IMG/VR virus record: IMGVR_UViG_3300005289_000016
Span: 124,001 to 188,000 of that record
Strand: one strand, 5' to 3'
Length of the DNA stretch: 64,000 bases
The position numbers and the translations under genes are program-made. The notes under the pieces were generated by a model. The model made no database searches. It was not told where the DNA came from and was given only the letters and a program-made list of their open reading frames with translations. This document shows, in pieces, positions 38,389 to 41,103 of the stretch (position 1 is the stretch's first letter; each line of letters starts with the position of its first letter).

Positions 38389-39240
38389 TCACTGTGGTTC
38401 GGCGAACGGATCGACCGGCTCGCTGAAGTGGATGATCAGATCGCCCGTGATGCCGTAGGCGTTGTCATGATCCAAACGCACTTGCAGGCCGTAGTCGTAG
38501 CTGCTGTTGAACAGCCCGTTGTCCGCTGTGGAACCCGCCGCCAAGATCTGAGCACCTTGCAGGCTGTACTCGGCATAACCAGTGAATGCCCAAGCATCAC
38601 CCGTCACATCGGTCAAGATCGTGGCCAGTTCCTGAGGAATGGCTTGACCGACCGTCAAGGTCTTCAGGTACGCCACGTGCTCGGAGAAGTTACGCCAGTA
38701 GCTGTACATCTGCGCAAATGGCAGCGTTGCATATGGCGTTGGATAATCCAGACCAGGCAATGCCGTAACAGTCAGGTAGTTCTCCAGTGGGATCTCGCCT
38801 TGGGACACGGACACCGACACAGTGCCGATCCAACCCAAGCTACTTGGTTCAGCAGTCAGCTGTACGGTCTTGTAGTCAGAAAGGTCTTCAGCATCCACCA
38901 GCACCACATCTGTGGTTTCGAGGTTGGTACCGAACCGCGCATTCAGGAAAGGCAGCAGGTCGTGTGAGTTCGTCACACTCGGTGCTTTCAACGTCAGCGT
39001 GACCAGCTTGGCCAAGTCGTCCAGCTTCAGGCGGTTGTAGAAGATGTCCACATCGCCTTGGTACGGAGCCGCTGTGTTATTCGCCCGGATGGTTACGTGC
39101 GAGTTGTGATTGGGGTGTTGACCGGTCTGGTTCAACTGGGGATTGATGAAATCATAATCCTCAGGGTCCAGTACGATCCCGCCGTTATTGCTCCCCACGA
39201 CATTCAAGAGTGTCGTGACGGGGTCTTTATAAAGAGACAT
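38389..39240 (-). CDS. virion structural paralogue
   Basis: HNSHV..YQGDVDIFYNRLKL; LPGLDYP; GDLIIHF. Confidence 0.85.
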   Translation of the reverse strand: MSLYKDPVTTLLNVVGSNNGGIVLDPEDYDFINPQLNQTGQHPNHNSHVTIRANNTAAPYQGDVDIFYNRLKLDDLAKLVTLTLKAPSVTNSHDLLPFLNARFGTNLETTDVVLVDAEDLSDYKTVQLTAEPSSLGWIGTVSVSVSQGEIPLENYLTVTALPGLDYPTPYATLPFAQMYSYWRNFSEHVAYLKTLTVGQAIPQELATILTDVTGDAWAFTGYAEYSLQGAQILAAGSTADNGLFNSSYDYGLQVRLDHDNAYGITGDLIIHFSEPVDPFAEPQ

Positions 39241-39253
39241 GGATCATCTCCGA

Positions 39254-40093
39254 TCAAGGATTGTAGTGGAAGAAGGCTGTCCCGGAATACCCGTTCGAGC
39301 GCAAGAGAGTCTGGACCACTACACGTGAGTACTCTCGGCTGGCGTCCGGATGATCCTTAGTAGCATAATCACGGAGCGTCATCTTGGACGTCGAGGAGAA
39401 GTCAATCCCCGGGAAGTTCTCGATGCCGTAGTATTCACTGAGTGCAGCCTGAAAGGCGGCCTGATCTACCCAGCTACCTTTGTAGTTGTTGCCGTACCGG
39501 TTCACTTTCAACTGTGGCGCAATGAACGAGAAGTCCTGTCCCCATGTGAGTAGACCGACACTGACGTACCCTTCCAGTACTGGATCGGGGTGTTTCAGTT
39601 CAGCGTATTCGCGAGTCGTTACCACACTCGTCAGCATGAGCTGTTCACGGTTGAACAACACTCGGGTGAAGCCGGTGTACGCCAGACTACCCGGCTTAGC
39701 CGTCAGTTCCAACGTGACCTGATCACCACCCGACAACAGCTTCAGGTCGATGTCGACGACATCTTTCTGGGTGAGGTTGATCCCCAGTGCCTTGTTCAGC
39801 TCAGGCAAGAGGCGGTACAGCGTGGATTGACCCAACGCCGAGAACTCAGGACGGTACGTGCCTCGATAGAGGACACCTAGGTCCAGACGGTCATAAAGAA
39901 GAGCCACCTTACCAGCATAGTCTTCAGCGTACACCCCACGAGCCATCACCGTAGTGTTGGAGTCAGGGTTGTCGAGGACGGTGCTGGCTTGACCGAAGAT
40001 GAGGTTGGTCGAATCAAACGCGATGATCGGTGTATTGGCGCGGTTGATCAGATCACGCACCATCTCATCTGGCGAGAGACTGTAGATTGACAT
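39254..40093 (-). CDS. virion structural paralogue
   Basis: RDLINRAN..NTTV..YAGKVALLYDRLDL; GTAFFHYN. Confidence 0.85.
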   Translation of the reverse strand: MSIYSLSPDEMVRDLINRANTPIIAFDSTNLIFGQASTVLDNPDSNTTVMARGVYAEDYAGKVALLYDRLDLGVLYRGTYRPEFSALGQSTLYRLLPELNKALGINLTQKDVVDIDLKLLSGGDQVTLELTAKPGSLAYTGFTRVLFNREQLMLTSVVTTREYAELKHPDPVLEGYVSVGLLTWGQDFSFIAPQLKVNRYGNNYKGSWVDQAAFQAALSEYYGIENFPGIDFSSTSKMTLRDYATKDHPDASREYSRVVVQTLLRSNGYSGTAFFHYNP

Positions 40094-40169
40094 GGTTGGT
40101 TCTCTCTAAGCGACTAGGATCGCCGAGGCCCGTAGACCCCGACGAGTGTTCTGCTCAACCAGCCAGCAC

Positions 40170-40685
40170 TTAGGACAGGCTGAGGGTGAGACCGTCGAGG
40201 ACCTTGGTGGTCACGGCGGTGTTCAGATCCTGGTCAGCCTGCTGGATGGTGATGACTACTTGACCACGGTAAGCGAACGAGCCCGCTGCGGCGATCAGGG
40301 TGAACTGCTGAGGAGTGCTGGTCAGATCGCCCGGCAGGGTCAGGTCCGAACGCACGTCGTCCAGTTGCAGGTTGGAGCCGTAGAACGTGTTGAAGCCGTC
40401 CAGGATGTGCTGGATGGTGACGTCACCTTCTACCTGAATCTGAGAAGGGATCTGGATCTCGAAGTCTGCCAAGTTGATCCGGTTGTAGAGGATCGTGGCA
40501 GTGTTCTTGAAGCCTTTACCCGGGATACCGGTCATCACCAATTCGGTGTTACGCTGTGGGGTTTCGCCCGATGCAGCGACTGGTTCACCGAAGCTGACCT
40601 TCTCGAAAGTCAGGTTAAGACCTGGGTTCTTCTCGTTGACCAGGGCGAGTACCTGGTCCTTTGAAAGCAGGGAAATGTCAGACAT
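40170..40685 (-). CDS. virion structural paralogue (short)
   Basis: LALVNEKN..RNTEL..FKNTATILYNRINL; start assigned to MSDISLL. Confidence 0.8.
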   Translation of the reverse strand: MSDISLLSKDQVLALVNEKNPGLNLTFEKVSFGEPVAASGETPQRNTELVMTGIPGKGFKNTATILYNRINLADFEIQIPSQIQVEGDVTIQHILDGFNTFYGSNLQLDDVRSDLTLPGDLTSTPQQFTLIAAAGSFAYRGQVVITIQQADQDLNTAVTTKVLDGLTLSLS

Positions 40686-40820
40686 GTCTTGATACCCGAA
40701 GTGGATTTGAAGAGCGGCTGACACTCGATAAATCGAGATGAGTTAAAGAGAGCAGCTACACATCATTTGACCACTCAAGATCCCGTAGATCTCTATAAAA
40801 GATATAAAGCAAATAAGGAA

Positions 40821-40846
40821 GGGATACAGGCCTTGGCCTGTATCCC
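40821..40846. terminator. strong hairpin in the divergent intergenic region
   Basis: GGGATACAGGCC-TT-GGCCTGTATCCC. Confidence 0.5.
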
Positions 40847-40926
40847 CTGTTTATAGTGGATTTGATTTTACTCAAACCATACATTACTCTCGTAACCAAA
40901 AACCAATAATCGAAATCCTATTGTAT

Positions 40927-41070
40927 GTACAGGCAGTAGATACTGTCAGGTGAGGGGGTGATCCAGCACGAGCGTTTAACCCGAAACGGTTGAGCATCGA
41001 CGGGAGTCCGAAGCATACGTTTCAACGGCGCCTGTACCGGGCAGCATGGGCTCAAACTCATGCTGCCCAT
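40927..41070 (+). ncRNA. candidate small structured RNA of unknown class
   Basis: TATG at 40924-40927; GTACAGGC (40927-34) pairs with GCCTGTAC (41030-37); then 10-bp terminator stem GGGCAGCATG/CATGCTGCCC. Confidence 0.5.
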
Positions 41071-41103
41071 TTATGCCGACACACATTTTGAAGGAGTATC
41101 CAA

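What the first reader, a model, noticed from the sequence alone, without database searches (positions are those of the whole stretch)
40924..41078. Candidate small RNA starting exactly at a TATG and closed by an 8-bp terminal stem
Seen: TATG at 40924-27, whose G begins GTACAGGC, pairing with GCCTGTAC (41030-37). Internal hairpins include CAGTA/TACTG, AACC..GAAA..GGTT and GAC-GGGA-GTC. A 10-bp terminator stem follows immediately, and there is no ORF. Established: in phiKZ late promoters the G of TATG is +1, and loop GGA motifs bind RsmA/CsrA. Inference: a discrete, about 145-nt late phage sRNA of unknown class.
Basis: partly seen in the sequence, partly recalled or inferred. Interest (0 to 1): 0.7.

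Follow-up and report, generated by a model that had tools for sequence, protein, structure and literature searches.

The report
Phage small RNA mimicking ribosome-binding site
The candidate is a real, structured small RNA gene conserved in phiKZ-like giant Pseudomonas phages (phiKZ itself included), and its most conserved part is a 14-20-base perfect partner for the very 3' end of the host's 16S ribosomal RNA, which suggests that the phage uses it to grip the small ribosomal subunit.

Summary
Observation confirmed. TATG (40924-27), the 8-bp closing stem (40927-34 with 41030-37) and a 12-bp terminator hairpin (41039-68, tail CAUUUAUGCC) are all present, with no conserved ORF. The window belongs to a 276-kb phiKZ-like jumbo phage related to pPa_SNUABM_DT01.

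The element is one member of an RNA family with no Rfam match. I found homologues in phiKZ (between gp203 and gp204), PhiPA3, PA1C, 201phi2-1, D6, Psa21, Phabio, Noxifer, DT01 and IMG/VR contigs.

Covariation is strong: 26 of 33 pairs carry double changes, and 89.6% of cells pair against 32-41% in slid controls.

In 201phi2-1 the homologue's terminator coincides with a published, experimentally validated transcript end.

New finding: the invariant core (window 40951-67) pairs with the Pseudomonas 16S rRNA 3' tail over 17 contiguous bases, and 14-20 across the family (-27 to -38 kcal/mol; the phage's own SDs have a median of -9.6). No start codon follows. Substitutions keep this pairing even where they break the RNA's own hairpin.

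Best reading: an RBS-mimic sRNA that binds the anti-SD tail of 30S subunits. This is inferred, not shown. The RsmA idea is not supported.

The parts
40860..40894 (+). Early-type phage promoter copy (ATTTGA, 14 nt, TACATTAC, TCTC, GTA). It would give a 5'-extended transcript starting near 40892.
   Evidence: The motif class aTTCGA-N13/14-TACATTAT-N4-GTG is found 18 times in the genome, nearly all 23-80 nt upstream of + strand gene starts. It is absent or degenerate upstream of the RNA in DT01, L012 and L014.
40898..40927 (+). Proximal promoter: AAAAAC (40898-903), 15 nt, TATTG (40919-23), TATG (40924-27). Inferred start at G40927 or G40923.
   Evidence: The AAAAC-N15 spacing is conserved in the window-clade relatives L011, L013 and L014. 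About 8 AAAAC-N15-YTATG sites lie upstream of genes in the genome. phiKZ-group homologues have the phiKZ middle-promoter motif at about -24 and TATA|G at the start of the closing helix. The TSS was not measured.
40927..41078 (+). The small RNA itself (about 152 nt including the terminator).
   Evidence: Covariance model hits at 108.7-134.2 bits, single copy in the genome. The family alignment shows covariation. The 3' end is placed by analogy with the mapped 201phi2-1 end within UUUAUGC|C.
40927..40934 (+). P1 5' strand (pairs with 41030-41037).
   Evidence: 8 pairs, 98.4% of cells paired, 6 of 8 pairs with double changes. Examples: GUACAGGC/GCCUGUAC, GUCAAGGC/GCCUUGAC, GACAAGG/CCUUGUC.
40935..40944 (+). 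P2 hairpin (AGU, loop AGAU, ACU); longer in phiKZ-group relatives.
   Evidence: U-A changes to A-U in L012. All 3 pairs show double changes across the family.
40951..40967 (+). 16S rRNA 3'-tail complement (UGAGGGGGUGAUCCAGC): an RBS-like block with no start codon. It can also form a local hairpin (GGG, loop GUGA, UCC).
   Evidence: 17 contiguous pairs (15 Watson-Crick, 2 G-U) with GCUGGAUCACCUCCUUA-3', the end of Pseudomonas 16S. Duplex energy is -34.5 kcal/mol. The block is invariant or changed only by pairing-preserving transitions in 16 members.
40980..41029 (+). Long arm. P4 is 40983-88 with 41019-24 (plus 40980-81 with 41028-29). It encloses P5, 40999-41001 with 41006-08, capped by GGGA.
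   Evidence: P4 variants: GAAACG/CGUUUC, GGAACG/CGUUCC (DT01), GAUAC/GUAUC (PA1C), GGUAC/GUACC (201phi2-1), GGGGU/ACCCC (phiKZ), AUGAGC/GCUCAU (D6). P5: GAC/GUC versus GGC/GCC.
41030..41037 (+). P1 3' strand.
   Evidence: See P1 5' strand.
41039..41078 (+). Intrinsic terminator: 12-bp stem, 6-nt loop, tail CAUUUAUGCC.
   Evidence: Fold. DT01 has a different hairpin sequence at the same place. The hairpin + UUUAUGCC form recurs after genes in this genome. The homologous terminator of 201phi2-1 (TTS 229,201) was validated in vivo (PMC11512511).

Best explanation
Window 40927-41078 (+) encodes a roughly 150-nt non-coding RNA.

How it is made: the phage's own RNA polymerase transcribes it from a TATG-type promoter, and an upstream early-type promoter may add a longer form. 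An intrinsic terminator ends it.

How it folds: a closing helix P1, a short hairpin P2, a long arm (P4/P5) capped by a GNRA loop, and between them a weakly structured 17-nt block.

What the block is: that block is the near-perfect complement of the last 17 nucleotides of host 16S rRNA, which include the anti-Shine-Dalgarno sequence. It therefore looks to a 30S subunit like an exceptionally strong ribosome-binding site with no start codon behind it.

Most likely action: after export from the phage nucleus, the RNA base-pairs with the free 3' tail of 16S rRNA on 30S subunits. It thereby occupies or masks the anti-SD. The probable consequence is re-programming or inhibition of SD-dependent initiation. 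Alternatively, or in addition, it may shield the 16S 3' end or stabilise the RNA itself.

What is shown: the gene, its fold, the family and the complementarity. What is inferred: binding to ribosomes and its effect.
For: (1) Real structured RNA. Fold z = -3.6. A model built from the window clade alone recovers full-length matches in PA1C, PhiPA3, phiKZ, Noxifer, D6 and 201phi2-1. In 16 members, 89.6% of cells pair against 32-41% in slid controls. 26 of 33 pairs carry double changes, and 0 of 500 shuffles reach this. G-U pairs fit only the + strand.

(2) Independent gene. Its flanks differ between phages, with three unrelated downstream genes in the window clade and DT01. In PA1C both neighbours are on the other strand.

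(3) Expression in a relative. The terminator of the 201phi2-1 homologue ends at the published TTS 229,201, a validated strong terminator.

(4) 16S complement. The Pseudomonas 16S ends in GCGGCUGGAUCACCUCCUUA. The block gives 17 contiguous pairs here and 14-20 in the family, at -26.6 to -38.2 kcal/mol. The 325 crudely called gene starts of this phage have a median of -9.6 and a best of -21.4.

Genome-wide, run lengths decay 382, 145, 46, 12, 4, 1 for lengths 9-14. They then jump to this site at 17, where about 0.05 is expected. Across a whole 6.6-kb rrn operon, the 16S 3' end is the best duplex site for 15 of 16 members.

(5) Selection is on intermolecular pairing. All substitutions in the core are A/G opposite a 16S U. 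In 6 members GGGGG is GGAGG, which turns a G-C pair of the RNA's own hairpin into A.C but a G.U with 16S into A-U. The stem flanking the hairpin is not conserved (helix 3, 76.9% paired).

(6) No start codon lies 4-10 nt downstream in any member, and an indel breaks any frame.
Against: No RNA-seq evidence exists for this phage. The public runs gave only low-depth contigs, probably DNA. No binding data exist.

The block can fold into its own hairpin (GGG/UCC with a GNRA loop), so it may be partly masked.

The phage's own mRNAs use SD sequences, so a global anti-SD blocker would also hit phage translation unless dosage or timing limits it. Ribosomes are far more numerous than most sRNAs.

The phiKZ Grad-seq study reported only two other ncRNA candidates and did not flag this locus.

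The distant homologues were first found by searching for the block itself, which biases the impression that it is the best-conserved part. The rest of the RNA and the model scores do confirm homology.

The family was not found in non-Pseudomonas chimalliviruses. So co-variation with different host 16S tails could not be tested.
Confidence: 0.55

Rival explanations
1. 3'-end cap. The RNA pairs with the 16S tail not to block initiation but to make the 3' end double-stranded. This would protect idle 30S subunits from 3'-to-5' exonucleases (RNase R starts 30S decay at the anti-SD tail) or from tail-cutting toxins during infection.
For: Pairing reaches the terminal nucleotides: U stands opposite A1542 in 11 of 16 members, A or G opposite U1541 in 15 of 16, and A opposite U1540 in all 16. 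This is more than an SD needs. RNase R begins 30S degradation at the anti-SD (abstract of PMC10901742).
Against: No data show ribosome decay in these infections. The terminal pair is missing in 201phi2-1, Viktualia, Psa21 and Phabio. It is the same physical interaction as the main explanation, so sequence alone cannot separate the two.
Confidence: 0.15
2. Self-serving stabiliser or standby site. The SD-like block recruits a 30S subunit only to protect this RNA (or read-through mRNA into the downstream gene) from RNases, or to pre-load ribosomes. This would resemble the STAB-SD 5' stabilisers of Bacillus and phage SP82 (from my own knowledge).
For: An untranslated SD-like element sits near the 5' end. 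Many phiKZ and 201phi2-1 small RNAs are 5'-UTR products with partial terminator read-through (PMC10914365; PMC11512511).
Against: In PA1C and HPP-Temi no co-oriented gene follows. Downstream genes differ between phages and carry their own SD. Complementarity of 14-20 nt is far beyond what stabilisers need. It does not explain why a conserved multi-helix fold surrounds the block.
Confidence: 0.12
3. Ribosome-unrelated structured RNA. The G-rich block exists for the RNA's own hairpin, or for binding a phage or host protein such as RsmA/CsrA or Hfq. Its likeness to an RBS would then be incidental.
For: The block can form a hairpin with tandem A-G/A-G and a GNRA loop.
Against: The hairpin's middle pair is broken in 6 members while 16S pairing improves. 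The GGA of the P5 loop is lost (GAGA) in several genera. A 17-20-nt match to one specific cellular RNA end is not expected from hairpin constraints.
Confidence: 0.1
4. Antisense regulator of a phage mRNA that happens to resemble the 16S tail. In this genome the sense strand of a conserved gene holds AGCUGGAUCACCUCCCUG at G000:C1:57838-57857.
For: This is the only other long match in the genome, a run of 19. The gene is on the + strand by third-position substitution and GC3, so the mRNA could pair with the block over about 14 bp.
Against: In DT01 a synonymous TCC-to-AGC change removes the CCUCC part. phiKZ and Noxifer have no such second site, yet they keep the block.
Confidence: 0.04

Closest known systems
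Small-RNA candidates of phiKZ and 201phi2-1 from ONT-cappable-seq (Putzeys et al. 2024, PMC10914365; 201phi2-1 study, PMC11512511)
   Same: Same phage group and same architecture: phage promoter, structured RNA under 250 nt, strong terminator. The 201phi2-1 homologue ends at one of their mapped and validated terminators (229,201). It may be one of their three 'intergenic' sRNAs. The phiKZ homologue may be among their 17 candidates.
   Different: Their lists are in supplementary tables that I could not read, so identity is unconfirmed. The one conserved sRNA they describe (upstream of tail gene gp182/gp277) is at another locus. Neither paper's main text, nor the 2026 jumbo-phage review, mentions a 16S or anti-SD complement or any function.
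STAB-SD / polypurine 5' stabilisers (Bacillus cryIIIA, phage SP82 early RNA; from my own knowledge)
   Same: An untranslated Shine-Dalgarno-like sequence that is thought to bind the 16S 3' end without starting translation.
   Different: Those are short (about 9 nt) cis elements of mRNAs in Gram-positives. This is a 14-20-nt complement displayed by a discrete, folded, terminated sRNA in phages of a Gram-negative.
6S RNA
   Same: The concept is the same: a stable non-coding RNA that mimics the nucleic-acid substrate of a core machine in order to occupy it. 6S mimics an open promoter for RNA polymerase; this RNA mimics an RBS for the 30S subunit.
   Different: No sequence or structure relation (no Rfam hit). 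The target machine is different, and binding is not shown here.
RsmY/RsmZ/CsrB protein sponges
   Same: Structured sRNAs that present SD-like GGA motifs in loops.
   Different: They carry many repeated GGA hairpins. Here there is one G-rich block, and the loop GGA is not conserved.
Ribosome-associated ncRNAs such as the Haloferax Val-tRNA fragment (PMC11009984, listed)
   Same: A small RNA that binds the small subunit in trans and competes with mRNA.
   Different: The tRF binds near the decoding site and does not pair with the anti-SD. The domain of life and the origin of the RNA are different.

Membership tests
Any curated Rfam family | Score at or near a family's gathering threshold | tested here: not met
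   No hit overlapping the element at E up to 10 in the window. None for the phiKZ and 201phi2-1 homologues at E up to 1.
The chimallivirus sRNA family defined here (models R1, R2) | Full-length covariance-model match with P1, P2, the 16S-complement block, P4/P5 and a terminator | tested here: met
   Window scores 108.7 bits (E 9e-22) with R2 and 134.2 bits with R1.
phiKZ-type nvRNAP promoter (TATG, G = +1) | TATG at the transcript start | tested here: met
   TATG lies at 40924-27, directly before P1. All relatives have TAT(A)G or TATG at the same place. The rule itself comes from PMC4666361.
phiKZ-type nvRNAP promoter (TATG, G = +1) | Measured 5' end at that G during infection | not testable with these tools
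   The public runs held only contigs of low depth. The TATTG 4 nt upstream fits the AAAAC-N15 spacing equally well.
phiKZ middle promoter | AAanTTACc centred near -24 | tested here: inconclusive
   A clear match in phiKZ, PA1C, PhiPA3 and 201phi2-1 homologues. In the window only AAAAACCAA is present (5 of 9), though the AAAAC-N15 spacing is conserved in the clade.
Intrinsic terminator of the phiKZ group | G+C-rich hairpin followed by UUUAUGCC-like tail | tested here: met
   41039-41078. The same form follows the homologues, and the 201phi2-1 one was validated. The generic T-run scan misses it.
Functional ribosome-binding site of an ORF | Start codon 4-10 nt after the SD core and a conserved reading frame | tested here: not met
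   UGAUCCAGC follows the core, with no AUG, GUG or UUG in range. A 2-nt indel occurs in L011 and L013. By contrast, unrelated phage contigs with the same GGAGGUGAUCCA string have ATG right after it.
RsmA/CsrA-sequestering sRNA | Several conserved GGA motifs exposed in hairpin loops | tested here: not met
   The only loop GGA besides the block is the GGGA of P5. It is GAGA in 201phi2-1, Viktualia, D6, Psa21 and Noxifer.
Anti-SD-binding (RBS-mimic) RNA | Extended contiguous complementarity to the 16S 3' tail, conserved through pairing-preserving changes | tested here: met
Anti-SD-binding (RBS-mimic) RNA | Physical association with 30S subunits | not testable with these tools
   Needs Grad-seq re-analysis, binding assays or chimeric-read methods.

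The most novel reading that the evidence does not exclude
phiKZ-like nucleus-forming phages make a dedicated 'ribosome-tail' RNA. It would be a trans-acting RBS mimic that clamps the anti-Shine-Dalgarno 3' end of host 16S rRNA with 14-20 bp. This would be a previously unrecognised way for a virus to take hold of, silence or protect the host's small ribosomal subunits: the translational counterpart of 6S RNA.
Probability: 0.4. Interest if true: 0.9.

Novelty: new variant of a known kind. Interest (0 to 1): 0.8.

Why it matters
How giant nucleus-forming phages win the competition for host ribosomes is an open question. Phage mRNAs are known to be favoured on ribosomes, and one ribosome-binding protein (gp014) is known, but the phage's non-coding RNAs are still uncharacterised (2026 review).

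This RNA family is present in the model phage phiKZ, where it is 100% identical in 42 of the 59 matching phage records over the 221 bases compared. It is also present in at least eight further lineages of Pseudomonas chimalliviruses.

Its conserved core points at one precise target, the anti-SD tail. The hypothesis can therefore be tested at once with existing tools: phiKZ Grad-seq and ONT data, antisense-oligomer knock-down, and 30S binding assays.

If true, it adds a new principle of viral control of translation. It would also offer a compact natural module for tuning or blocking SD-dependent initiation.

If false, it is still a well-supported new structured RNA family, with a defined promoter and terminator, useful for phage annotation.

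Tried and rejected
- Rfam: no match. tRNA/tmRNA: none.
- Public RNA runs: two searches and two layings gave only Logan contigs of low depth, most probably DNA. One peat metatranscriptome contig from a relative starts inside the RNA and runs 6.9 kb. No transcript ends can be read from these.
- TATTGTATG as a repeated promoter word: it is unique in the genome.
- Sigma-70 promoter: only a minus-strand consensus match (40949-40920) that is not conserved in relatives, so chance.
- MAFFT plus RNAalifold on the 15 diverse members failed to align P1. Model-guided alignment was used instead, and it leans towards the model's structure.
- Degenerate pattern scans of IMG/VR mostly returned chance or ordinary RBS matches. 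They did yield 201phi2-1, which opened the family, and one more member (L343).
- Search for the family in Elvirus EL, Erwinia Desertfox, Ralstonia RP12 and Xanthomonas RTH11: none by model or motif. So the planned test, whether the block tracks differences in host 16S tails, could not be done.
- Synteny with the gp203-type helicase holds for phiKZ, PhiPA3, PA1C, HPP-Temi, D6, Psa21, RVTF4 and Phabio (and 201phi2-1, a few genes away). It does not hold for this phage, where the helicase is 30 kb away.
- A second 19-nt match in the genome turned out to lie on the sense strand of a protein gene and is not kept in DT01.
- Supplementary tables listing the phiKZ and 201phi2-1 sRNA candidates are not held.
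- No complex prediction was run, since it gives no verdict for RNA.

Full report
**1. The observation**

- TATG lies at 40924-27.
- GTACAGGC (40927-34) is exactly complementary to GCCTGTAC (41030-37).
- CAGTA/TACTG and GAC-GGGA-GTC are present.
- Directly after the closing stem comes a hairpin of 12 pairs (41039-50 with 41057-68), followed by CATTTATGCC.

The 152-nt stretch folds at -62.3 kcal/mol, z = -3.6 against dinucleotide shuffles. Only short frames cross it. There are no tRNA or tmRNA genes and no Rfam match.

**2. Where it sits**

The window is bases 124,001-188,000 of a complete 276-kb virus record. Its only GenBank relative at the DNA level is Pseudomonas phage pPa_SNUABM_DT01. DT01 is a phiKZ-like jumbo phage with virion and non-virion multisubunit RNA polymerases (PMC8541153).

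To the left lie three tandem minus-strand paralogues of a virion structural protein family, DUF7941. To the right are a 51-codon ORF with its own GAAGGAG site and further unknown genes.

**3. It is conserved as an RNA, not as part of its neighbours**

In DT01 only the stretch from CCCTATTGTATG to the end of the closing stem is alignable (88% identity). The flanking genes are unrelated. The hairpin that follows has a different sequence but the same position.

Five IMG/VR contigs carry variants with three different downstream genes. Among these close relatives, the few substitutions include double changes that keep pairs:
- GAC/GUC to GGC/GCC
- U-A to A-U in the CAGU hairpin
- GAAACG/CGUUUC to GGAACG/CGUUCC

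**4. A family across Pseudomonas chimalliviruses**

A motif scan turned up 201phi2-1. BLAST from there and from phiKZ found homologues in these phages:
- Viktualia, PhiPA3, PA1C and its relatives, and HPP-Temi
- D6, RVTF4 and Psa21
- phiKZ (between gp203 and gp204), where the match is 100% identical over 221 bases in 42 of the 59 matching records
- Noxifer, Phabio and one more IMG/VR contig

A covariance model built only from the window clade finds most of these over their full length.

On the model-guided alignment of 16 members:
- 89.6% of cells form standard pairs, against 32-41% when partners are slid.
- 26 of 33 pairs show changes on both sides.
- No shuffle out of 500 reaches the observed values.

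The alignment is fitted to the model, which favours it. But P1, P4 and P5 covary plainly by eye: for example GUACAGGC, GUCAAGGC, GCCAAGGC and GACAAGG each have a matching 3' strand. G-U pairs fix the strand as +. The RNA is single-copy in this genome.

The family was not detected in EL, or in Erwinia, Ralstonia and Xanthomonas chimalliviruses.

**5. Ends of the transcript**

In every member the closing helix begins right after TAT(A)G or TATG.

In the phiKZ-group members the upstream sequence matches the phiKZ middle-promoter motif (AAanTTACc near -24). The start of nvRNAP transcripts is the G of TATG (PMC4666361).

In the window clade the conserved upstream element is AAAAC, 15 nt, TATTG-TATG. 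About eight AAAAC-N15-YTATG sites precede genes in this genome. The 5' end is therefore inferred at G40927, or at G40923 by the spacing rule.

Forty bases further upstream is a copy of what looks like this phage's early promoter class (aTTCGA-N13/14-TACATTAT-N4-GTG). There are 18 copies, mostly just upstream of genes. It could give a longer early form.

For the 3' end, the homologue in 201phi2-1 runs from 229,020 to a terminator whose UUUAUGC|C tail contains the published transcript end 229,201. That is one of the strongest terminators validated in vivo (PMC11512511). By analogy the window RNA ends near 41078.

Public sequencing runs gave no usable transcript evidence for this phage.

**6.

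The most conserved stretch of the family is (U)(A/G)AGG(G/A)GGUGAUCCA(G)(C/U)(C/A).

I verified with tools that Pseudomonas 16S rRNA ends in GCGGCUGGAUCACCUCCUUA. The string occurs in many Pseudomonas genomes. In P. putida PSE7 the Rfam SSU model ends exactly there.

The window block (40951-67) pairs with the last 17 nucleotides without a gap (15 Watson-Crick, 2 G-U).
- In this 276-kb genome the lengths of such runs fall off smoothly: 382, 145, 46, 12, 4, 1 for 9 to 14. They then jump to this site.
- Across the family the duplex is 14-20 bp and -26.6 to -38.2 kcal/mol. The best pairing upstream of the phage's own genes has a median of -9.6 and a maximum of -21.4.
- Scanning a whole rrn operon, the 16S 3' end is the best partner for 15 of 16 members.
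- No start codon follows at a usable distance, and indels break any frame. In unrelated phage contigs the same GGAGGUGAUCCA string is followed at once by ATG.

**7. What is selected**

The block can fold on itself (GGG, GUGA, UCC, with tandem A-G). But three observations point to the partner outside the RNA.
- Every substitution in the core is a purine exchange opposite a U of 16S, so pairing is kept as A-U or G-U.
- Six members have GGAGG instead of GGGGG. This breaks the central G-C of the internal hairpin (A.C) while improving the pairing with 16S.
- The stem flanking the hairpin is poorly conserved.

The GGGA loop of P5, on which the RsmA idea rests, is GAGA in several genera. It therefore behaves as a GNRA loop.

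**8. Mechanism**

Shown:
- a conserved, folded, terminated non-coding RNA gene of phiKZ-like phages
- a conserved extended complement to the anti-SD tail

Inferred: the RNA, once outside the phage nucleus, binds the 3' tail of 16S rRNA on 30S subunits as an RBS mimic.

What follows from that is open.
- Occupation of the anti-SD would disfavour SD-dependent initiation. This is my leading reading.
- Making the 3' end double-stranded could protect it from 3' exonucleases. RNase R starts 30S decay at this tail (PMC10901742).
- The bound subunit might merely stabilise the RNA or a read-through mRNA, like Bacillus STAB-SD elements.

Arguments against a simple global block are that phage genes also use SD sequences, and that ribosomes are very abundant.

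**9. Known or new**

The 201phi2-1 and phiKZ transcriptome papers list small-RNA candidates in supplementary tables that I could not read. The homologues may be among them.

The one conserved sRNA those papers discuss lies at another locus, the tail gene 5' UTR. The main text of these papers does not mention a 16S or anti-SD complement. The Grad-seq paper reports two other ncRNA candidates and does not mention this locus, and the 2026 review says only that phiKZ expresses non-coding RNAs of undefined role.

I therefore rate the gene as a new, well-supported RNA family. Its proposed mode of action would be new if confirmed.

**10. Verdict**

It needs correcting on the internal fold and on the RsmA idea.
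- The element's real interest is the conserved RBS-mimic block aimed at the 16S 3' end.

Noticed in passing
window 17418, 40880, 41325, 50070 (and 14 more in G000:C1): A bipartite promoter-like motif, aTTCGA-N13/14-(G)ATACATTAT-N4-GTG, recurs 18 times, nearly always on the + strand and 23-80 nt before a gene start. It resembles the TCTATATTAC early-promoter word seen downstream of the phiKZ and D6 homologues, so it is probably this phage's early (virion RNAP) promoter.
   Followed up: partly
window 40819-40848: A perfect 11-13-bp hairpin (GGGATACAGGCC/GGCCTGTATCCC) with T-rich tails on both strands lies between the start of the minus-strand DUF7941 gene and the sRNA promoters. It is conserved in the window clade. 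A minus-strand TATG at 40881-40878 could start a leader that runs into it. Its role (bidirectional insulator or 5' leader hairpin) is unknown.
   Followed up: no
G000:C1:38130-38457 (L327), outside the window: A 330-nt intergenic stretch is very rich in GGA/GGGAAGG repeats. It is preceded by AAAAC-N14-TATAGTATG and GCAAGGC, reminiscent of the start of the sRNA family. It is a candidate second non-coding RNA, and a better RsmA-sponge candidate than the element studied. No Rfam hit.
   Followed up: partly
G000:C1:57838-57857 (L326:1539-1558), outside the window: The sense strand of a conserved 644-codon gene (homologue of DT01 PA10_00147) contains AGCTGGATCACCTCCCTG, a 19-nt look-alike of the 16S 3' tail that could pair with the sRNA block. 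In DT01 a synonymous TCC-to-AGC change removes part of it, so it is probably chance.
   Followed up: yes
G000:C1:56451-58394 minus strand: A 647-codon open frame antisense to that gene is also open in DT01 (66% identity by tblastn). Third-position substitutions and GC3 show that the + strand is the coding one. This is a warning about long shadow ORFs in this 54% G+C genome.
   Followed up: yes
window 40974-40995 versus 40983-41024: The minimum-energy hairpin (GUUUAACC / GGUUGAGC) and the covarying long-range helix P4 exclude each other. In PA1C versus PhiPA3 the equivalent local hairpin (CUUUAAC/GUUAAAG versus CUUAAC/GUUAAG) also shows a compensating change. The RNA may switch between two folds.
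   Followed up: no
L183:1585-1650, L175:2663-2723, L178:522-590 (phiKZ, 201phi2-1, PA1C): phiKZ-group homologues carry an extra hairpin between the closing helix and the terminator. The window clade, DT01 and Noxifer lack it.
   Followed up: no
window 41021-41029; L178, L183 equivalents: The segment after P4 (CUACGG in the phiKZ group, CAACGG here) is complementary to GCCGUAG, the 5' strand of 16S helix 45 next to the tail. Duplex scans extend to it in PA1C, PhiPA3 and phiKZ. It could be a second contact or chance.
   Followed up: partly
window 38389-40685, minus strand: Three tandem paralogues of DUF7941 (PHROG 'virion structural protein').
   Followed up: partly
after terminator hairpins throughout G000, e.g. 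window 41069-41078: Terminator hairpins in this phage group are followed by UUUAUGCC-like tails that contain TATG. Overall, TATG is under-represented in the genome (616 found against about 1790 expected from base composition).
   Followed up: no
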